From Paramoeba atlantica (Eukaryota > Protista > Discosea), in NCBI GenBank assembly GCA_977017575.1, contig CDRNVI010000246.1:1-9841 (forward strand): DNA of 9,841 nt. The letters run 5' to 3'. The position numbers were made by a program, and so were the translations under genes. This document shows positions 1 to 9,841 of this stretch, piece by piece. The stretch's first letter is position 1. Every line of letters starts with the position of its first letter. The notes beneath the pieces were generated by a model, which saw only the letters and a program-made list of their open reading frames with translations, searched no databases and was not told the origin of the DNA.

Positions 1-475
1 CGTTGCTATCCCTATATGTATGTAAAATATCATACATAAGAATCAATAAGATCTATTTCGTCTCCTCTTTCATCCTTTTAACATAGCAAGACTAATCTAT
101 ATTATATAATTATTATTCAACTTTTTTAATTATATTTTATCTGCTTGAACACCATAGTTCGATAAAAAATAAATAAAAAGATGAATAAATAACTAAAAAA
201 TAAAGATAGACAAGAACAAGAATAGTTTAGTTTAATTCCGTGTTAAATCCTCAATCCTTAAGTCGGATTTGTCACTCCATATACGATCAAACTTTATTTA
301 CTTAAATTTTTACAAAGATAGTAAAATTAAAAGTATAAAGATGATCTAGCTCACCAGTTTTATTTAAATTAAAATCTTACACAATGATTTTATATTTATA
401 AACTACTCGCTTCCATCGACCCTCGACTTTGTTGAAGTTTAAGTTTTTGAGTTTACGATATTAAAGAGAAAAAAA

Positions 476-621
476 ATATTATTGCGCTCTATTGGTGGGG
501 CTTTCGTTAAATTATTAAAAGCTCAACGTCATTGTTCGCGTTTTACGTTACACTCCACAAGCTAAACAAGTGCGTTCTGCCTTAATAATCACTACCCCTC
601 ACCAAAAGGTCGCAATAATAT
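476..621 (+). other. Long imperfect stem-loop / multibranch domain (also at 5085-5230; partial in copy 3)
   Basis: atattattgcg 476-486 pairs with cgcaataatat 611-621. ttggtgggg 492-500 pairs with cctcaccaa 597-605 (one G.U on +). attattaa 511-518 pairs with ttaataat 582-589. aacgt 525-529 pairs with acgtt 545-549. Confidence 0.6.
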
Positions 622-789
622 ATGTTTTTAGCGTTTAAGATCTGGAGACCATTTTCAAAATAGAAAATGTCAATCGCTTTTTTCTTACGCAAGTACGTCA
701 AAAAAATCGTTTTTCTCCATGAGCTAAAACGAGTTAGTTCGATCGGGCTTTTTTTGATGCTTTTTTTGGATCGCAGCTTCAACAAAAAA

Positions 790-1910
790 AAATTTCCGCT
801 GCTGTTTTCCAACAAAGAAAATTATAAAAAAATAATTTTGTTGTTGTCAAATACGATCTTTTAAAATATAAAATTTTTTTTATCGTTATAAATTTTATTC
901 CGACATAAATTTGTTGGAAAAGTAACAGTAAAAAGTTGTTAATGAAAAAAAAATAAATTCATTAACAACAACGTTGATGAAAAATAACAATCAACGCTGT
1001 TAAATTTCCAACAAAATAATGTCAGAAAAAAATTTCTGCCGAAATAATTTAGCTGATTAAATTTTTATCACGACAAAAATATTTTTTTGTTGATCAATTA
1101 AATCGTTATTAACAAAAAAGTTATAACGCTGTTAATTTTCCAACATAAAAATTTTTTATCTCTCAAAAAATATTTTTTGATGTTCAAAGTTATCGTTTGA
1201 TAACAAAAAAGTTATAACGCTGTAACTTTTCCAACAAAAAAAATTTTTTTTCGTGTTAAAAATTATTTTTGATCAATAAAAATTATTTTCGATGTTCAAA
1301 TTCATCGTTTGATAACAAAAAAGTTATAACGCTGTTAATTTTCCATCAAAAATTATTTTTTTTGCTTCAAAAATTTTTTTTAACATAAAAATTTATAATG
1401 ATGATTACAAAATAAGTGTTGCAACTCAAAAAAGTTGTTTAACACTGTTAATTTTCCATCAACATCATAATTTTTATTTAAAAATTTTAATCAAAATCAA
1501 TTTTATAAACATTTTTTGTAAAAAAATTAAAATTTTTACTGGAAAATTACGGTGAGATGCATAAAAATTAGATTTAAACATAAATTTATGCAAACTACCG
1601 TTTAATTTCCAACAAAATTTAAATTTTTTTCATTCAAAAATAGATTTTTTTAATTTTTCGCCGACAAAATTGAAAAAAAATTGAATTTTCATTCAAAAAG
1701 TTGTAAAATTGAGTCTCAGGATGAAAAAGTGGAAAAAGACCACATTTTATCAATTCGACGCTAAATTAGCAAAAAATTTCAATTTCTACACCTAAATGAC
1801 TGTAGAAATTGGTGTTTTCCTACAATTTTGTGGAAACTCCTGACAAACACTGCTAAATTTCCAACAAAAAGTCAATTTGCAGGTGCTGCCCGTGGATTTT
1901 CCAACAAAAT
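790..1910 (+). repeat. Degenerate subrepeat ladder built on (aac)gctgtt..ttcca(a/t)caaaa (also ~5400-6517)
   Basis: Exact 22-mer aacaaaaaagttataacgctgt at 1111, 1202 and 1314 (periods 91 and 112), with a degenerate copy near 1427. ttcca(a/t)ca motif near 807, 1006, 1138, 1229, 1341, 1454, 1607, 1859 and 1899, plus one inverted copy (ttgttggaa) at ~911. Confidence 0.85.
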
Positions 1911-1919
1911 ACTAGCAAA

Positions 1920-2545
1920 ACTACTCAAAATGCTATTTTTCCGGCAGAAAACCGTCAAAATCTGCTTTTTCTGGGCAGGAATGACAAAAACGGCCCAAAA
2001 AAGGCCCTGTCATTTTGCCCAAAAACGCAGTATTTTTTCCTGTTCTGGCCTGCAAATTAGCGGATGTCCAAGTGCCCCAAAAAAAGTGACTTGGACTCCG
2101 AGCCGACTCGAAAAGTCGTATTTTCCGGCAGAAACGAAAAAATATGCCACATTTTGTCCGACGATTATTTACAACTTTTTCTCGCATCCCATCATAGCGA
2201 TTTTGCGGATCTGCAAGTTGGGAGGGAACCAACTGCATTTTTTGGCCGTTTTGAACCCGTTTTGTAAAAAATCGCATATATAAACTCCATAATTTCCCCT
2301 CAGAAATCTGCCACTTTTGGACGCCAAAAAGTGTTTTGCAGAATCTCGAGGGCAAAATAGGAGTTTTTTGACCCGATTTTGTGAACAAAACTGGCATCAA
2401 AAACTATTCCAAATGCTCCAATCCGAATTTCAGCTATTGAACACTAAAAATGCTGAAAATCGCTATTTCGCACTGGAATTCCGCCAAAACTCCTTTTCAA
2501 TGCGTATTTTGGGCGAGAAAATCGTGAATTTTATAATTTTTAAAC
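1920..2545. other. Phased An/Tn tracts with ~10-bp period in a GC-richer island (PATC-like / bent DNA); also ~6527-7152
   Basis: A/T runs start at 1927, 1936, 1948, 1957, 1966, 1986 and 1997, and at 2446, 2456, 2466, 2477, 2486, 2494, 2507, 2518, 2527 and 2536, separated by G/C-rich spacers. Confidence 0.7.
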
Positions 2546-2829
2546 TTTTTTTTGTATAATTTATCATTTTTAGCGCGGATTTGTATAATTTCTCGCATAA
2601 TTTATTAGTTTTATAGCGTTGTAGTTAAAATTTTCATAATTTTATCATCAAAGTCATCATTTTTCTATAATTTCAAACAAAATTATTAAAAAAAATGTTG
2701 TCTCAGACGAAAAAATTGCATGAAAGTTGTTAAACAACACTAAAACTAAAAAAATATCCCGCAGAAATTAAAAAACCGTGATAAAAATTTATAAATTCAA
2801 AAGAAAAATTTAAAAATCTTAAAAATTTA

Positions 2830-2873
2830 TGATGAAATCATCTTCTTTGTACCAAAATCAGATGTAAACATCA
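2830..2873 (-). repeat. Truncated inverted copy of module-A core forming a mini-hairpin (also 7437-7480)
   Basis: Shares atcttctttgt(a/t)ccaaaatcagatgt with the inverted modules at ~3262-3287 and ~7876-7901. Closed by tgatg/catca. Confidence 0.75.
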
Positions 2874-3219
2874 AAAAATTTTTTTAAAATCACTAGTTGA
2901 AACCATCGTCTATGGTTTCTTTTGTTAATGATCAATGTTTTCATTTCATTCATAACATTTTCACGTTAACTTCGTTCAACTAACTTGAATTTTATTAAAA
3001 TTATGATTCATAAAATAATTTTTTCATTGCTAAAAATAAAACCGCAATGGAAATTATTATGAAACAAGTTTTAATAATTCAAACTTAAGTTTGAACTCGA
3101 GTTATAAAATTTTAATAACATTAATATATACTTTTAAATAACTTCTATAATTAATTCAAAAGAGAATTTATAATTAAGAACTTATAAAACTATATTTAAT
3201 GATTTAAAACTTAATAACT

Positions 3220-3327
3220 TGTTGTAATGTTTTCAATATAATAATATATTTACGATATATTATCTTCTTTGTTCCAAAATCAGATGTTGATTATCGTACA
3301 TTCTTATTACATGAAAACATAACAACA
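3220..3327 (-). ncRNA. Module A, inverted copy (putative structured hairpin; strand uncertain)
   Basis: 3275-3320 is the reverse complement of the module-A 5' arm. Stems: tgttgt/acaaca, atgttttca/tgaaaacat, taataa/ttatta, tacgata/tatcgta. Confidence 0.5.
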
Positions 3328-3463
3328 TAAAGAATACAATAGGCACTCCTTACATTTAAATGCCCTTAATATAATTTATCGATATATTTAATTACACAAA
3401 TAATTTAAAATATAATTTATAAAATATTAATAAAGTTCATGTAAAATGTAAGAAGTTACCCTA

Positions 3464-3609
3464 GTTTTCCTGGTATTGTGAGTATGTTTTCATGTAATAA
3501 ACATGTACGATAATCAACATCTGATTTTGACTCAAAGCAGAGTAATCATCGTTAAATATCGTTACAAAGTTATTACAAATAAAACATAAATCACTAATAA
3601 CAGGAAAAT
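3464..3609 (+). ncRNA. Module A hairpin, direct copy 1 (putative structured RNA)
   Basis: Core atgtacgataatcaacatctgatttt. Basal stems: ttttcctg/caggaaaa, gtga/tcac, tatgtttt/aaaacata, tgtaataa/ttattaca. Confidence 0.55.
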
Positions 3610-3820
3610 ATTAAATACAAAAATATTTAATAAACTTCGATGCAAAAAAGCATCTTGACAATCTCTGTGTTTTTGTTAAAAAAAATAGCGTAAAACTACA
3701 AAACCATATATATAAAATGAAAAGTGTATAAAAAAGAAAAGCATACACTTTGATACATTCAATCGAAAAATATCTCAATCATGTATCATTAATTTTAGTA
3801 TATATGGTAGGAGTTTTACC

Positions 3821-3960
3821 TTTACAGTGCTATTAGTCATGTTTTCATGTAATAAGAATGTACGATAATCAACATCTGATTTGCACTCAAAGTAGAGTAA
3901 TCATCGTTAAATATCAGTACAAAGTCATTACAAGAAAACTAAAGATTAAAGCACTGTAAA
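3821..3960 (+). ncRNA. Module A hairpin, direct copy 2 (putative structured RNA)
   Basis: Same core with one substitution. Basal stems: tttacagtgct/agcactgtaaa, ttagtc/gattaa (G.U), gttttc/gaaaac, tgtaat/attaca. Confidence 0.55.
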
Positions 3961-3961
3961 A

Positions 3962-3996
3962 TTGCACTAAGATTTCCTTCAGAAATTCAAGTGCAA
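3962..3996 (+). other. Module D hairpin (7-bp outer stem, AAG/TCA internal loop, atttc/gaaat inner stem)
   Basis: ttgcact-aag-atttc-cttca-gaaat-tca-agtgcaa. Siblings at 4074-4106, 8222-8254, 8257-8291, 8585-8617, 8620-8654 and 8728-8762 have covarying stems. Confidence 0.75.
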
Positions 3997-4073
3997 ATAT
4001 CCGCCCAACTTATAAAATATAAGTGGCGTCTATATATATTTTTTTATCGAAAAAAACGATAAATAAATAAAGA

Positions 4074-4106
4074 TCATGATAAGATTTCTACGAAATTCAA
4101 TCATGA
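4074..4106 (+). other. Module D hairpin
   Basis: tcatgat-aag-atttc-tac-gaaat-tca-atcatga. Confidence 0.75.
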
Positions 4107-4107
4107 A

Positions 4108-4127
4108 GCATACACTATAGTGTATGC
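4108..4127. repeat. Perfect 20-bp palindrome gcatacactatagtgtatgc (also 8764-8783)
   Basis: Self-reverse-complementary and identical in both copies. Confidence 0.95.
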
Positions 4128-4246
4128 AAATTATTACAAAAATAATAATTTTAAAATTTTTTCTTCGAAATTCAAAGAAGAATTTATTCGAAAAAAATAT
4201 AAATTTTAATGTTTTCGTGTTTAACTACAACTTAAATTTATATATA

Positions 4247-4700
4247 TTTCGTTAAATTAAGAGAATAATTAAACGAAACTGTTACTCGGCAAAAATAAGG
4301 GAATTTTTGAGTAACAGACCGTTCAAATTGAAAACAAAAAAACAATTTGCACGGCAATTCTTGGGGTTTTTACGCCTCACGGCTTCGTGATTGGACTAAA
4401 GAGCAGGAGCGAGAGCAAGAAAGTTTGCAGGGGTAGTTGAGTTAGCTATTCCCGGTGGAAGCTAACCTCGATTCTTTAGTCTTTAGTTGTGGTAATTTGG
4501 GATAGTGAAGTAAAATTTTTAAAGTTCACTATCGACAATTACTATTCTCTTTCATCTTTTGGCGTGCATTGCTAATTGATCCCAATAGACAATCACATTC
4601 AGAAATGATCGTTGCTATCCCTATATGTATGTAAAATATCATACATAAGAATCAATAAGATCTATTTCGTCTCCTCTTTCATCCTTTTAACATAGCAAGA
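4247..4700 (+). ncRNA. Putative structured ncRNA domain with compensatory substitutions between copies (equivalent 8903-9355); family unassigned
   Basis: Stems at 4247-4278, 4279-4317, 4319-4354, 4361-68/4578-85, 4371-76/4561-66, 4377-90, 4394-4402/4473-81, 4439-69, 4490-4544 and 4624-47. T4506-A4528 becomes C9162-G9184; G4492-C4542 becomes A9148-T9198. Confidence 0.6.
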
Positions 4701-7700
4701 CTAATCTATATTATATAATTATTATTCAACTTTTTTAATTATATTTTATCTGCTTGAACACCATAGTTCGATAAAAAATAAATAAAAAGATGAATAAATA
4801 ACTAAAAAATAAAGATAGACAAGAACAAGAATAGTTTAGTTTAATTCCGTGTTAAATCCTCAATCCTTAAGTCGGATTTGTCACTCCATATACGATCAAA
4901 CTTTATTTACTTAAATTTTTACAAAGATAGTAAAATTAAAAGTATAAAGATGATCTAGCTCACCAGTTTTATTTAAATTAAAATCTTACACAATGATTTT
5001 ATATTTATAAACTACTCGCTTCCATCGACCCTCGACTTTGTTGAAGTTTAAGTTTTTGAGTTTACGATATTAAAGAGAAAAAAAATATTATTGCGCTCTA
5101 TTGGTGGGGCTTTCGTTAAATTATTAAAAGCTCAACGTCATTGTTCGCGTTTTACGTTACACTCCACAAGCTAAACAAGTGCGTTCTGCCTTAATAATCA
5201 CTACCCCTCACCAAAAGGTCGCAATAATATATGTTTTTAGCGTTTAAGATCTGGAGACCATTTTCAAAATAGAAAATGTCAATCGCTTTTTTCTTACGCA
5301 AGTACGTCAAAAAAATCGTTTTTCTCCATGAGCTAAAACGAGTTAGTTCGATCGGGTGTTTTTTGATGCTTTTTTTGGATCGCAGCTTCAACAAAAAAAA
5401 ATTTCCACTGCTGTTTTCCAACAAAGAAAATTATAAAAAAATAATTTTGTTGTTGTCAAATACGATCTTTTAAAATATAAAATTTTTTTTATCGTTATAA
5501 ATTTTATTCCAACATAAATTTGTTGGAAAAGTAACAGTAAAAAGTTGTTAATGAAAAAAAATAAATTCATTAACAACAACGTTGATGAAAAATAACAATC
5601 AACGCTGTTAAATTTCCAACAAAATAATGTCAGAAAAAAATTTCTGCCGAAATAATTTAGCTGATTAAATTTTTATCACGACAAAAATATTTTTTTGTTG
5701 ATCAATTAAATCGTTATTAACAAAAAAGTTATAACGCTGTTAATTTTCCAACATAAAAATTTTTTATCTCTCAAAAAATATTTTTTGATGTTCAAAGTTA
5801 TCGTTTGATAACAAAAAAGTTATAACGCTGTAACTTTTCCAACAAAAAAATTTTTTTTCGTGTTAAAAATTATTTTTGATCAATAAAAATTATTTTCGAT
5901 GTTCAAATTCATCGTTTGATAACAAAAAAGTTATAACGCTGTTAATTTTCCATCAAAAATTATTTTTTTTGCTTCAAAAATTTTTTTTAACATAAAAATT
6001 TATGATGATGATTACAAAACCAGTGTTGCAACTCAAAAAAGTTGTTTAACACTGTGAATTTTCCATCAACATCATAATTTTTATTTAAAAATTTTAATCA
6101 AAATCAATTTTATAAACATTTTTTGTAAAAAAATTAAAATTTTTACTGGAAAATTACGGTGAGATGCATAAAAATTAGATTTAAACATAAATTTATGCAA
6201 ACTACCGTTTAATTTCCAACAAAATTTAAATTTTTTTCATTCAAAAATAGATTTTTTTAATTTTTCGCTGACAAAATTGAAAAAAAATTGAATTTTCATT
6301 CAAAAAGTTGTAAAATTGAGTCTCAGGATGAAAAAGTGGAAAAAGACCACATTTTATCAATTCGACGCTAAATTAGCAAAAAATTTCAATTTCTACACCT
6401 AAATGACTGTAGAAATTGGTGTTTTCCTACAATTTTGTGGAAATCCCTGACAAACACTGCTAAATTTCCAACAAAAAGTCAATTTGCAGGTGCTGCCCGT
6501 GGATTTTCCAACAAAATACTAGCAAAACTACTCAAAATGCTATTTTTCCGGCAGAAAACCGTCAAAATCTGCTTTTTCTGGGCAGGAATGACAAAAACGG
6601 CCCAAAAAAGGCCCTGTCATTTTGCCCAAAAACGCAGTATTTTTTCCTGTTCTGGCCTGCAAATTAGCGGATGTCCAAGTGCCCCAAAAAAAGTGACTTG
6701 CACTCCGAGCCGACTCGAAAAGTCGTATTTTCCGGCAGAAACGAAAAAATATGCCACATTTTGTCCGACGATTATTTACAACTTTTTCTCGCATCCCATC
6801 ATAGCGATTTTGCGGATCTGCAGGTTGGGAGGGAGCCAACTGCATTTTTTGGCCGTTTTGAACCCGTTTTGTAAAAAATCGCATATATAAACTCCTTAAT
6901 TTCCCCTCAGAAATCTGCCACTTTTGGAGACCAAAAAGTGTTTTGCAGAATCTAAAGTGGAAAATAGGAGTTTTTTGACCCGATTTTGTGAACAAAACTG
7001 GCATCAAAAACTATTCCAAATGCTCCAATCCGAATTTCAGCTATTGAACACTAAAAATGCTGAAAATCGCTATTTCGCACTGGAATTCCGCCAAAACTCC
7101 TTTTCAATGCGTATTTTGGGCGAGAAAACCGTCGATTTTATAATTTTTAAACTTTTTTTTGTATAATTTATCATTTTTAGCGCGGATTTCTATAATTTCT
7201 CGCATAATTTATTAGTTTTATAGCGTTGTAGTTAAAATTTTCATAATTTTATCATCAAAGTCATCATTTTTCTATAATTTCAAACAAAATTATTAAAAAA
7301 AATGTTGTCTCAGACGAAAAAATTGCATGAAAGTTGTTAAACAACACTAAAACTAAAAAAATATCCCGCAGAAATTAAAAAACCGTGATAAAAATTTATA
7401 AATTCAAAAGAAAAATTTAAAAATCTTAAAAATTTATGATGAAATCATCTTCTTTGTACCAAAATCAGATGTAAACATCAAAAAATTTTTTTAAAATCAC
7501 TAGTTGAAACCATCGTCTATGGTTTCTTTTGTTAATGATCAATGTTTTCATTTCATTCATAACATTTTCACGTTAACTTCGTTCAACTAACTTGAATTTT
7601 ATTAAAATTATGATTCATAAAATAATTTTTTCATTGCTAAAAATAGAATCGCAATGGAAATTATTATGAAACAAGTTTTAATAATTCAAACTTAAGTTTG

Positions 7701-7823
7701 AACTCGAGTTATAAAATTTTATAAATTTAAATTATAATTTCAATCATTTCTATAATTAATTCAATAGAGAATTTATAATTATGAAACTATGAAACTATAT
7801 TTAATGATTTAAAATTTAATAAT

Positions 7824-7953
7824 CCCTGTATGTGTTCTTTATGTTTTCAATGTCTGATGATATGTTCGATATATCATCTTCTTTGTACCAAAATCAGATG
7901 TTGATTATCGTACATTCTTATTACATGAAAACAAAAAAGAACATACAACAGGG
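7824..7953 (-). ncRNA. Module A, inverted copy in unit 2 (strand uncertain)
   Basis: 7889-7932 is the exact reverse complement of 8097-8140. Basal stems ccctgt/acaggg, tgttcttt/aaagaaca and tgttttca/tgaaaaca; the outer two differ from unit 1. Confidence 0.5.
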
Positions 7954-8077
7954 AAATACTAAGATACTTTAATAACTATTATGTATATAAATTGATCGAA
8001 TATATAATTACAAAAATAATTTAAAATATTCAATAATATTAAATATATATAGTTATTAAAGTGATCTTGTATCCTAG

Positions 8078-8220
8078 TTCATGTCGATTCTTTTAGGTTT
8101 TCATGTAATAAGAATGTACGATAATCAACATCTGATTTTGACTCAAAGTAGAGTAATCATCGTTAAATATCAGTACAAAACTTATTACAAAGAAAACAAC
8201 TAATAAAGCATCGACATGAA
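8078..8220 (+). ncRNA. Module A hairpin, direct copy 1 in unit 2
   Basis: Same core. Basal stem ttcatgtcgat/atcgacatgaa (11 bp perfect), plus gttttc/gaaaac, tgtaataag/cttattaca and tgtac/gtaca. Confidence 0.55.
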
Positions 8221-8221
8221 A

Positions 8222-8291
8222 TTCTGCTAAGATTTCTACGAAATTCAAGCAGAAAATTACACTAAGATTTCCTATAGAAATTCAAGTGTAA
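8222..8291 (+). other. Two tandem module D hairpins (8222-8254, 8257-8291)
   Basis: Outer stems ttctgct/agcagaa and ttacact/agtgtaa. The AAG/TCA loop and atttc/gaaat inner stem are retained. Confidence 0.75.
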
Positions 8292-8440
8292 ACAAACATT
8301 AGTATTGCAAAAACAATCTATGTTTGTATTAAAAAAAACACATCTAGAACAATATAATATAAATCAATAAAAATATTTAATTACAAAAATAATATAAAAT
8401 ATAATTTATAAATTTATTATTAAAATGATCTAGATGAACA

Positions 8441-8583
8441 TATTCCTGGGTATTCTAATGTGGTTTTCATGTAATAAACATGTACGATAATCAACATCTG
8501 ATTTTGACTCAAAGTAGAGTAATCATCGTTAAATATCGTATAAAGTTTATTAATAATAAAACCACAAAGGAATCCAAGGAATA
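8441..8583 (+). ncRNA. Module A hairpin, direct copy 2 in unit 2
   Basis: Same core. Basal stems tattcct/aggaata, attc/gaat, tgtggtttt/aaaaccaca, taataaac/gtttatta and tgtacgata/tatcgtata (G.U). Confidence 0.55.
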
Positions 8584-8584
8584 A

Positions 8585-8654
8585 TTATGCTAAGATTTAT
8601 ACTAAATTCAAGCATAAGATTGCACTAAGATTTCCTTCAGAAATTCAAGTGCAA
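8585..8654 (+). other. Two tandem module D hairpins (8585-8617, 8620-8654)
   Basis: ttatgct-aag-attta-tac-taaat-tca-agcataa (inner C-G replaced by A-T) and ttgcact...agtgcaa. Confidence 0.75.
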
Positions 8655-8727
8655 ATATCCGCTCAACTTATAAAATATAAGTGGCGTCTATATATTTAAT
8701 CATTACAAAAATAATGAATTAAATAGA

Positions 8728-8762
8728 TCATGATAAGATTTTTTACAAAAATTCAATCATGA
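8728..8762 (+). other. Module D hairpin
   Basis: tcatgat-aag-attttt-tac-aaaaat-tca-atcatga. The inner stem is changed on both arms relative to 4074-4106. Confidence 0.7.
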
Positions 8763-9265
8763 AGCATACACTATAGTGTATGCAAATTATTACAAAAATA
8801 ATAATTTTAAAATTTTTTCTTCGAAATTCAAAGAAGAATTTATTCGAAAAAAATATAAATTTTAATGTTTACGTGTTTAACTACAACTTAAATTTATATA
8901 TATTTCGTTAAATTAAGAGAATAATTAAACGAAACTGTTACTCGGCAAAAATAAGGGAATTTTTGAGTAACAGACCGTTCAAATTGAAAACAAAAAAACA
9001 ATTTGCACGGCAATTCTTGGGGTTTTTACGCCTCACGGCTTCGTGATTGGACTAAAGAGCAGGAGCGAGAGCAAGAAAGTTTGCAGGGGTAGTTGAGTTA
9101 GCTATTCCCGGTGGTAGCTAACCTCGATTCCTTAGTCTTTAGTTGTGATAATTTGGGATAGCGAAGTAAAATTTTTAAAGTTCGCTATCGACAATTATTG
9201 TTCTCTTTCATCTTTTGGCGTGCATTGCTAATTGATCCCAATAGACAATCACATTCAGAAATGAT

Positions 9266-9841
9266 CGTTGCTATCCCTATATGTATGTAAAATATCATAC
9301 ATAAGAATCAATAAGATCTATTTCGTCTCCTCTTTTTTCTTTTAAAATAGCAGGACTAATCTATATTATATAGTTATTATTCAACTTTTTTAATTATATT
9401 TTATCTGCTTGAACACCATAGTTCGATAAAAAATAAATAAAAAGATGAATAAATAACTAAAAAATAAAGATAGACAAGAACAAGAATAGTTTAGTTTAAT
9501 TCCGTGTTAAATCCTCAATCCTTAAGTCGGATTTGTCACTCCATATACGATCAAACTTTATTTACTTAAATTTTTACAAAGATAGTAAAATTAAAAGTAT
9601 AAAGATGATCTAGCTCACCAGTTTTATTTAAATTAAAATCTTACACAATGATTTTATATTTATAAACTACTCGCTTCCATCGACCCTCGACTTTGTTGAA
9701 GTTTGAGTGTTTGAGTTTACGATATTAAAGAGAAAAAAAATATTATTGCGCTCTATTGGTGGGGCTTTCGTTAAATTATTAAAAGCTCAACGTCATTGTT
9801 CGCGTTTTACGTTACACTCCACAAGCTAAACAAGTGCGTTC
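9266..9841. repeat. Tandem repeat unit, copy 3 (partial, runs off window)
   Basis: Matches 1..577 with a net 1-bp deletion and a few substitutions (e.g. 9331-9355, 9704-9710). Confidence 0.97.

What the first reader, a model, noticed from the sequence alone, without database searches (positions are those of the whole stretch)
3220..3960. Module A: family of ~110-145 nt hairpins with a near-invariant 26-nt core and fully exchanged basal stems
Seen: six copies (3220-3327, 3464-3609, 3821-3960, 7824-7953, 8078-8220, 8441-8583) share atgtacgataatcaacatctgatttt (one substitution at 3821-3960). Each is closed by a different complementary basal stem: ttttcctg/caggaaaa, tttacagtgct/agcactgtaaa, ttcatgtcgat/atcgacatgaa, tattcct/aggaata, tgttgt/acaaca and ccctgt/acaggg. 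Inner helices also covary (taataag/cttatta versus taataaac/gtttatta). The apical part from tgtac to gtata is 62 nt, pre-miRNA sized, with the conserved segment on the 5' arm. G.U pairs in direct copies favour the + strand. Inference: structure-selected precursors of one small RNA (pri-miRNA-like cluster) or a repeated protein-binding RNA/ssDNA domain. I do not recognise the family.
Basis: partly seen in the sequence, partly recalled or inferred. Interest (0 to 1): 0.9.

Follow-up and report, generated by a model that had tools for sequence, protein, structure and literature searches.

The report
Constant-arm hairpin family in a satellite repeat
Six long hairpin-forming modules that share one invariant 43-base arm sit in the fast-changing part of a very abundant, gene-free 4.6-kb tandem repeat; they may be sources of small RNAs, but nothing yet shows that they are transcribed, and replication errors could have built much of their pairing.

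Summary
Six copies of the 26-nt core exist against a chance expectation of 0. Each lies in a 108-146 nt hairpin (z -4.5 to -9.9) closed by its own complementary 9-24 nt basal arms.

Three corrections:
- The copies are not independent. They lie in two adjacent units of a 4.6-kb tandem repeat, as positional homologues and local duplicates.
- Wobble pairs do not favour the + strand (7 on the core-sense strand, 14 on the antisense strand, of about 300 pairs). ssDNA folds the same way.
- The "exchanged" stems are not stepwise covariation. A1 and A4 differ by matching ~9-nt indels in both arms, which needs reverse-complement (template-switch-like) copying. The inner helices show 0 of 33 double-compensated pairs.

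The strongest sign of function is arm asymmetry. The 43-nt arm is 43/43 identical between A1 and A4; the partner arm is 19/28 and the flanks 56-86%.

An inverted copy and a direct copy can also form a perfect 44-bp duplex.

Best reading (0.4): a dsRNA, small-RNA source like hpRNA/endo-siRNA loci, rather than a canonical miRNA cluster. Main rival (0.33): DNA-only palindromes of a satellite.

There is no Rfam match, no hit in the public collections scanned and no RNA evidence. An unchecked scan note reports the same 43-nt-arm family on another piece of this genome.

The parts
3220..3327 (-). A1: inverted-orientation hairpin module (core arm on the - strand), short 9-nt basal arms
   Evidence: core hit; fold (z -4.5/-5.4); arm ladder
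3464..3609 (+). A2: direct hairpin module, 22/24-nt basal arms
   Evidence: (z -7.5/-9.0)
3821..3960 (+). A3: direct hairpin module (core with one substitution), 20/21-nt basal arms
   Evidence: a different 5' basal arm is seen in another sample's contig (run X5)
7824..7953 (-). A4: inverted-orientation module, positional homologue of A1 in the next repeat unit, with a matching ~9-nt insertion in both arms
8078..8220 (+). A5: direct hairpin module, 19/23-nt basal arms
   Evidence: (z -8.1/-9.6)
8441..8583 (+). A6: direct hairpin module, 22/21-nt basal arms, partly homologous to those of A2
8098..8140 (+). Reference copy of the 43-nt constant arm. The same arm is at 3487-3529, 3842-3884 and 8464-8506 (+) and, reverse-complemented, at 3276-3318 and 7890-7932
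   Evidence: invariant columns of alignment A1; 43/43 identical between A1 and A4
3249..3555 (.). Larger inverted repeat made by A1 and A2 (73-nt arms, 84% complementary, perfect 44-bp centre, 161 nt between arms). The unit-2 counterpart is A4/A5, about 7877-8150
   Evidence: I1; whole-region folds
2825..2870 (-). Truncated relic of the A4-type apex with its own new lower stem; twin at 7432-7477
3113..4100 (.). Hypervariable ~1-kb cassette of unit 1 that holds A1-A3 and the short D hairpins; unit-2 cassette is about 7720-8700
   Evidence: self-comparison; lower depth than the constant part in run X1

Best explanation
Family A is a set of ~100-nt imperfect palindromic modules. Each is extended at its base by a copy-specific duplex of about 20 bp. 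The modules lie in the hypervariable ~1-kb cassette of a gene-free, very high-copy 4.6-kb tandem repeat.

One arm (43 nt) is held constant in every copy and in both orientations. The opposite arm drifts but stays largely complementary. The basal duplexes are replaced wholesale by reverse-complement (template-switch-type) copying.

The most likely working model is that the cassette is transcribed and the modules supply double-stranded RNA. Each module could fold locally into a 50-56 bp imperfect hairpin. Alternatively, an inverted copy could pair with a direct copy in a perfect 44-bp duplex. A Dicer-type enzyme would then make small RNAs dominated by the constant arm. This resembles hairpin-RNA / endo-siRNA loci more than canonical miRNA genes.

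Shown here: the anatomy, the fold stability, the one-arm conservation, the templated paired changes and the long-range perfect duplex. Inferred: transcription, processing, and any target or silencing role.
For: - Six copies of the core against 0 expected.
- All six fold far better than shuffles.
- Arm asymmetry between the positional homologues A1 and A4: core arm 43/43 identical, partner arm 19/28, left flank 110/128, right flank 74/132.
- Among the four direct copies, the first 75 inner columns have 5 variable positions, while the 26 columns of the 3' lower arm have about 11.
- The partner arms differ between copies, yet each still pairs with the same constant arm.
- The imperfect apex, with the same internal loops and bulges, is identical in all four direct copies although their flanks are only 60-80% alike.
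- A transcript spanning A1+A2 or A4+A5 folds into a long-range hairpin with an uninterrupted duplex of about 44-51 bp between the two core arms (-110.4 and -131.6 kcal/mol, z -11.6 and -15.1).
- The basal duplexes are 19-24 nt in five of six copies, about one small-RNA length. With the 43-nt arm, each hairpin arm is about three such lengths. This is numerology only.
Against: - No RNA evidence. The only RNA-labelled run of the same organism label laid nothing, and it is tiny.
- No strand bias in wobble pairs, 7 versus 14 of about 300.
- Single-stranded DNA gives the same folds with equal stability on both strands.
- No double-compensated pair in the inner helices.
- The paired multi-nucleotide changes can arise from replication template switching without selection (PMC8794818, PMC5453318).
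- The identity of the core arms could also be kept by gene conversion between nearby inverted and direct copies.
- Unchecked scan notes describe many other hairpin arrays in this genome. That could point to a genome-wide mutational habit rather than to many functional RNAs.
- The organism is not identified, so whether it has Dicer or Argonaute is unknown.
Confidence: 0.4

Rival explanations
1. These are DNA-only palindromes of a satellite. The hairpins are a by-product of replication template switching, which extends and repairs quasi-palindromes, together with gene conversion and unequal exchange in a high-copy tandem array. No RNA is made from them, or none with a function. The constant arm is a conversion island, not a selected sequence.
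For: - Nearly all pairs are Watson-Crick, both strands fold alike and ssDNA parameters give the same folds.
- A1 and A4 differ by matching ~9-nt indels in both arms. Basal arms of about 20 nt are replaced as complementary blocks while neighbouring flanks stay alignable. Independent point changes cannot do this, and template switching does it in one step (PMC8794818, PMC5453318).
- The whole stretch 2800-4620 is a chain of back-to-back hairpins.
- The repeat is gene-free and extremely abundant.
- Outside the cassette the units are 96-98.6% identical, so 43/43 identity between A1 and A4 is not surprising on its own.
Against: - A symmetric DNA process gives no reason for one arm to stay invariant while its partner changes at 9 of 28 positions.
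- Template switching should perfect the apex, yet the same imperfect apex is kept in four copies whose flanks have diverged 20-40%.
- A 43-nt island with the same limits in both orientations and in all six copies would be a fragile outcome of conversion alone. An unchecked note (s1-369789) reports the same arm on another piece.
Confidence: 0.33
2. It is a cis-acting hairpin or cruciform element. The constant arm is a binding site for a protein, presented in a stem-loop of single-stranded DNA or RNA or in an extruded cruciform. It would serve replication, segregation (centromere-like) or maintenance of this very high-copy, possibly extrachromosomal or organellar, repeat.
For: - Very high copy number, and the same DNA turns up in runs labelled as eleven other organisms.
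- The core works in either orientation.
- The surroundings are AT-rich and iteron-like, with 91-112 bp subrepeats.
- Hairpin stability is the same as ssDNA.
Against: - The apex is imperfect, with a 4-bp tip and several internal loops. By general knowledge of cruciform kinetics this disfavours extrusion from duplex DNA; I did not test it.
- No kinetoplast minicircle CSB-3 / universal minicircle sequence, even allowing two mismatches.
- No partner protein or origin signature could be examined.
Confidence: 0.15
3. It is a canonical pri-miRNA cluster. Each hairpin would be cut to a ~62-nt precursor and give one ~22-nt mature RNA from the 26-nt core.
For: The 5' arm is more conserved than the 3' arm. 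The apical part is of pre-miRNA size.
Against: - The conserved stretch is 43 nt, not about 22.
- The hairpins abut neighbouring hairpins with 0-1 nt linkers.
- Two of the six copies are on the opposite strand and give a perfect 44-bp antisense partner.
- The locus is a very high-copy satellite.
- No Rfam miRNA family comes near threshold.
- Unchecked scan notes suggest a euglenozoan-like protist, a group in which I know of no canonical miRNA pathway.
Confidence: 0.07

Closest known systems
Hairpin-RNA (hpRNA) / endo-siRNA loci made of inverted repeats. Examples are Drosophila hpRNA genes and the inverted-repeat and satellite (CIR147) siRNA loci of Trypanosoma brucei (recalled from the literature, not re-read here).
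   Same: Non-coding, repeat-derived long inverted repeats able to form tens of base pairs of near-perfect duplex. Located in tandem repeats. Copies in both orientations give built-in antisense.
   Different: No small RNAs have been observed. One 43-nt arm is invariant while the rest turns over. The local hairpins are imperfect, at 50-56 bp, with a copy-specific basal duplex. There is no sequence relation to any described locus.
Hairpins created and maintained by replication template-switch mutations (Monttinen and Loytynoja 2022, PMC8794818; Loytynoja and Goldman 2017, PMC5453318).
   Same: Multi-base complementary changes in both arms, new perfect stems next to an existing hairpin, and reverse-complement copies within a few hundred bases.
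   Different: That work describes a mutational mechanism, not a family or a function. It does not predict an invariant arm or a conserved imperfect apex.
Animal and plant miRNA precursor clusters.
   Same: Tandem hairpins with a better-conserved 5' arm and an apical part about the size of a precursor.
   Different: The conserved arm is twice the miRNA length. Copies lie on both strands, hairpins are back to back, the context is a very high-copy satellite, and there is no family match.
Guide-RNA gene cassettes of kinetoplast minicircles, for example the T. brucei cassettes flanked by 18-bp inverted repeats and the tandem gRNA-bearing kDNA of Trypanoplasma borreli (PMC9679448).
   Same: High-copy, AT-rich DNA with a constant part plus a variable cassette of similar size (~110-150 nt), bounded by inverted repeats.
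   Different: The logic is reversed here: the centre is constant and the flanks vary. There is no CSB-3 and no ScaI-type 1-kb repeat. A constant core cannot guide different editing sites.

Membership tests
canonical miRNA precursor | Match to a described miRNA family (covariance model at gathering score) | tested here: not met
   Rfam 15 at E<=1: only MIR3932 at 23.3 bits (threshold 150) over A4, and mir-2007 at 26.3 bits (threshold 100) elsewhere in the window
canonical miRNA precursor | Discrete ~22-nt mature and star reads with 2-nt 3' overhangs | not testable with these tools
   The one RNA-labelled run available laid nothing and is very small.
canonical miRNA precursor | Mature arm more conserved than the opposite arm | tested here: met
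   43/43 versus 19/28 between A1 and A4; 5 variable of 75 columns versus about 11 of 26 among the direct copies. The conserved stretch is 43 nt, not about 22
hpRNA / endo-siRNA inverted-repeat locus | Inverted repeat able to form a long, near-perfect duplex within one transcript | tested here: met
   73-nt arms at 84% with a perfect 44-bp centre. The MFE of 401- and 406-nt stretches uses this duplex
hpRNA / endo-siRNA inverted-repeat locus | Small RNAs from both arms that depend on Dicer and Argonaute | not testable with these tools
   No usable RNA data. The rest of the genome cannot be searched for Dicer or Argonaute genes from this window
template-switch-derived palindrome | Multi-nucleotide reverse-complement changes in both arms that single substitutions cannot explain | tested here: met
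   Matching ~9-nt indels in both arms of A4 relative to A1, and block replacement of basal arms between alignable flanks
MITE / foldback transposon | Conserved terminal inverted repeats at the element ends, flanked by direct target-site duplications | tested here: not met
   The ends are the variable part and the centre is conserved. No direct repeats flank any copy. Homologous sites in the two units both carry the module, but with different basal arms
C/D or H/ACA-like snoRNA | Conserved C (RUGAUGA) and D (CUGA) boxes, or an AGA/ACA box 3 nt from the 3' end | tested here: not met
   A UGAUGA string occurs only in A4 and is not conserved in A1. No Rfam snoRNA hit
kinetoplast minicircle / gRNA cassette | Universal minicircle sequence CSB-3 (GGGGTTGGTGTA) | tested here: not met
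   No match with up to 2 mismatches on either strand

The most novel reading that the evidence does not exclude
This would be a scaffold-plus-payload hairpin array. The constant ~100-nt apex is a recognition scaffold for a processing enzyme. The hypervariable ~20-bp basal duplexes are the payload: a diversifying set of small-RNA guides written by reverse-complement copying, carried in the fast-turnover cassette of a very high-copy repeat, and differing between units and between samples. In effect it would be a eukaryotic, repeat-borne library of shRNA-like guides.
Probability: 0.07. Interest if true: 0.9.

Novelty: new member of a known kind. Interest (0 to 1): 0.5.

Why it matters
If the modules are transcribed and diced, they would be an undescribed small-RNA source in what the scan's unchecked notes take to be a euglenozoan-like protist. 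Its design would be unusual: a constant 43-nt arm, built-in antisense copies and a rapidly rewritten basal duplex. It would also tie a very abundant satellite to RNA silencing.

If they are not transcribed, the locus is still a clear natural example of template switching building and rewriting long stems. It is a caution against reading "perfect compensation" as proof of RNA-level selection. That caution applies to the many other hairpin arrays noted in this genome.

Tried and rejected
- Rfam at permissive E-value: nothing relevant.
- tRNA scan: none.
- ORFs: only short, low-complexity frames.
- Exact-pattern scans for the core in the metagenome, prokaryotic-genome and viral collections: 0 hits.
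- A second pattern, from the GC-richer domain of the unit: 0 hits.
- Full-text paper search for six substrings of the core, as RNA and DNA on both strands: 0 papers.
- kDNA minicircle reading: no CSB-3. The Trypanoplasma borreli gRNA-bearing repeats and the maxicircle divergent-region descriptions do not match.
- snoRNA reading: the boxes are not conserved.
- Hammerhead-like CUGAUGA: present only in A4.
- MITE, or insertion into a pre-existing palindrome: no target-site duplications, and homologous sites in both units are occupied but carry different basal arms.
- Basal arms as copies of other parts of the unit: no 12-mer is shared elsewhere in the window.
- Column-wise covariation on a MAFFT alignment of all six copies: the basal arms have no positional homology, so it is uninformative.
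- Naming the organism: the run labels are coded and the scan notes give only hints (SL RNA, CRE/VIPER-like elements). A paper search for Prp8 inteins with spliced leader gave nothing useful.
- Findings look-up by sequence: blank.

Full report
**Setting.** The window holds 2.1 copies of a tandem unit of about 4.6 kb: 1-4609, 4610-9265, and the start of a third unit at 9266. The units are 96-98.6% identical outside a stretch of about 1 kb that barely aligns. The window is about 75% A+T. It has only short, low-complexity ORFs, no tRNA and no Rfam family at E<=1 apart from far sub-threshold miRNA-model noise.

In one run of the source organism's label, 617,872 of 3.48 million contigs lay on 6 kb of this window, with summed word depths in the millions. 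Pieces identical to the window also occur at low depth in runs labelled as eleven other organisms. The repeat is therefore extremely abundant. Its owner seems to travel as a contaminant, parasite or commensal, but I could not name it. Unchecked notes of this scan mention spliced-leader RNA and CRE/VIPER-like retroelements in the same genome, which hints at a euglenozoan-like protist. I used this only as a prior.

**The observation.** The 26-nt core occurs six times with at most one mismatch, against zero in 200 shuffles. There are three copies per unit. One is inverted (A1 3220-3327; A4 7824-7953) and two are direct (A2 3464-3609 and A3 3821-3960; A5 8078-8220 and A6 8441-8583).

Every interval folds into a single long hairpin of 38-56 bp on either strand, with z-scores from -4.5 to -9.9. 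It runs 43 nt (reference copy 8098-8140), with two variable positions in A2 and A6 and one in A3.

Outside the conserved inner ~90-100 nt, each copy has its own basal arms. They are 19-24 nt in five copies and 9 nt in A1. Each pairs with its own partner (scores 7-14) and not with the partners of other copies (mean about 4). No 12-mer of these arms recurs elsewhere in the window. Two truncated relics of the apex, each with yet another lower stem, lie at about 2825-2870 and 7432-7477.

**Corrections to the observation.**
- The six copies are not independent. A1 and A4 are positional homologues in adjacent units. The direct copies belong to ~360-nt sub-repeats whose upstream spacers still align.
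- The strand claim fails. Wobble pairs number 4 on the + strand and 10 on the - strand in the direct copies. Over all copies there are 7 on the core-sense strand and 14 on the antisense strand, out of about 300 pairs. This is compatible with an even split. With DNA parameters both strands give the same structure and nearly the same energy. Nothing tells RNA from single-stranded DNA, or one strand from the other.
- Classical covariation is almost absent from the conserved part. RNAalifold on the four direct inner hairpins finds 33 pairs, none changed on both sides.

**How the "exchanged" stems arose.** A1 and A4 share an upstream flank (110/128 identical). A4 carries about 9 extra bases in its 5' basal arm and a complementary ~9 extra bases in its 3' basal arm. 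Two independent, mutually complementary insertions are not credible, so one arm must have been copied from the other as a reverse complement.

The same holds for the ~20-nt basal arms of the direct copies. They are replaced as complementary blocks between spacers and inner modules that remain alignable. [quoted passage not shown] The basal stems therefore show a templated mutational process. On their own they do not show selection for structure.

I rejected insertion of a mobile module into pre-existing palindromes. Homologous sites in both units are occupied but have different basal arms, and there are no target-site duplications.

**What still needs function.** The two arms evolve at very different rates.
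- Between A1 and A4, the core arm is 43/43 identical, the loop 11/12, the partner arm 19/28 and the right flank 74/132.
- Among the direct copies, the first 75 inner columns have 5 variable positions. The 26 columns of the 3' lower arm, which pairs with the invariant 5' lower arm, have about 11.
- The partner arms reach pairing by different means: a perfect match, a bulge or a wobble.
- The imperfect apex, with identical internal loops and bulges, is kept in four copies whose flanks are only 60-80% alike. Template switching should tend to perfect it.

A symmetric DNA-level process does not predict this asymmetry. Purifying selection on one arm as a sequence does, with the other arm needed only as a partner. 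The neutral alternative is gene conversion confined to a 43-nt island. It is possible, but it needs the same sharp limits in all copies and both orientations.

**A second structure.** Because A1 and A4 are inverted, their core arm is a perfect 44-nt complement of the core arm of the next direct copy, within a 73-nt repeat that is 84% complementary overall. When 401 or 406 nt spanning both modules are folded as one RNA, the minimum-energy structure is not two local hairpins. It is one long-range hairpin with an uninterrupted duplex of about 44-51 bp (-110.4 and -131.6 kcal/mol, z -11.6 and -15.1). This checks an earlier unverified note of the scan. It gives a second reason for the arm to be invariant in both orientations. 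It also resembles a long-dsRNA, endo-siRNA source more than a pri-miRNA.

**Variation between units and samples.** In the deep run, the two cassettes of this window have roughly 0.75-2 million summed depth, against 5-12 million for the constant part. These particular cassettes therefore seem to be a minority among many versions. Summed contig depth is a crude measure, so this is only indicative. A contig from a differently labelled sample carries about a dozen substitutions in the 5' basal arm of A3 and then matches the core. That looks like yet another basal arm on the same scaffold, but its partner arm was not visible.

**Verdict.** The family is real and undescribed in the libraries I could search. 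I rank the readings as follows.
- **0.40:** a transcribed dsRNA, small-RNA source of the hpRNA/endo-siRNA kind, with a constant 43-nt arm.
- **0.33:** DNA-only satellite palindromes shaped by template switching and gene conversion.
- **0.15:** a cis-acting hairpin or cruciform binding site for maintenance of the high-copy repeat.
- **0.07:** a canonical miRNA cluster.

The most novel reading not excluded is a scaffold-plus-payload guide library in which the rewritten ~20-bp basal duplexes are the product (about 0.07). Transcription, processing and targets are all inferred. No RNA data could be brought to bear.

I place interest at 0.5. The anatomy is striking and the arm asymmetry is hard to explain neutrally.

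Noticed in passing
window 1-9841: The whole window is a gene-free ~4.6-kb tandem repeat. Units are 96-98.6% alike except for a ~1-kb hypervariable cassette. Depth in one run is in the millions. Identical pieces appear in runs labelled as eleven other organisms, so the owner may be a widespread contaminant, parasite or commensal.
   Followed up: partly
window 3962-3997, 4076-4107, 8222-8255, 8258-8292, 8586-8618, 8621-8655, 8729-8763: Short 'D' hairpins follow the direct A modules after a 1-nt linker. They have a conserved upper stem (GATTTC/GAAATT type) and internal loop, and a lower 7-bp stem whose sequence differs between copies but always pairs. This is the same constant-apex, variable-base logic as in family A.
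   Followed up: partly
window 4492-4545 versus 9152-9205: Two hairpins of the GC-richer domain differ between units by single compensated pairs (T-A to C-G, and G-C to A-T), among very few differences in that domain. Either selection on structure or arm-to-arm templated repair could explain this.
   Followed up: partly
window 800-2130 and 5400-6740: About ten same-strand copies per unit of a TTTCCAACAAAA-type motif, partly within 91-112 bp subrepeats. The layout is like iterons or spacer promoter/terminator repeats.
   Followed up: no
window 911-1050: Another very stable long hairpin in the constant part of the unit (z -9.7 on + and -8.1 on -), unrelated in sequence to family A.
   Followed up: no
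window 2800-4620: Almost the whole stretch folds as a chain of back-to-back hairpins with few unpaired linker bases, several of them perfect palindromes.
   Followed up: no
window 1956-2036 and 6563-6643 (- strand): A GC-richer hairpin gives a weak, sub-threshold hit to the mir-2007 model (26 bits against a threshold of 100, E 0.08). It is probably just a generic hairpin.
   Followed up: no
Read-laying output, places 3816-3840: Places in the difference table name the base that stands one position further right in the window sequence. There seems to be an off-by-one between that table and the window coordinates.
   Followed up: partly
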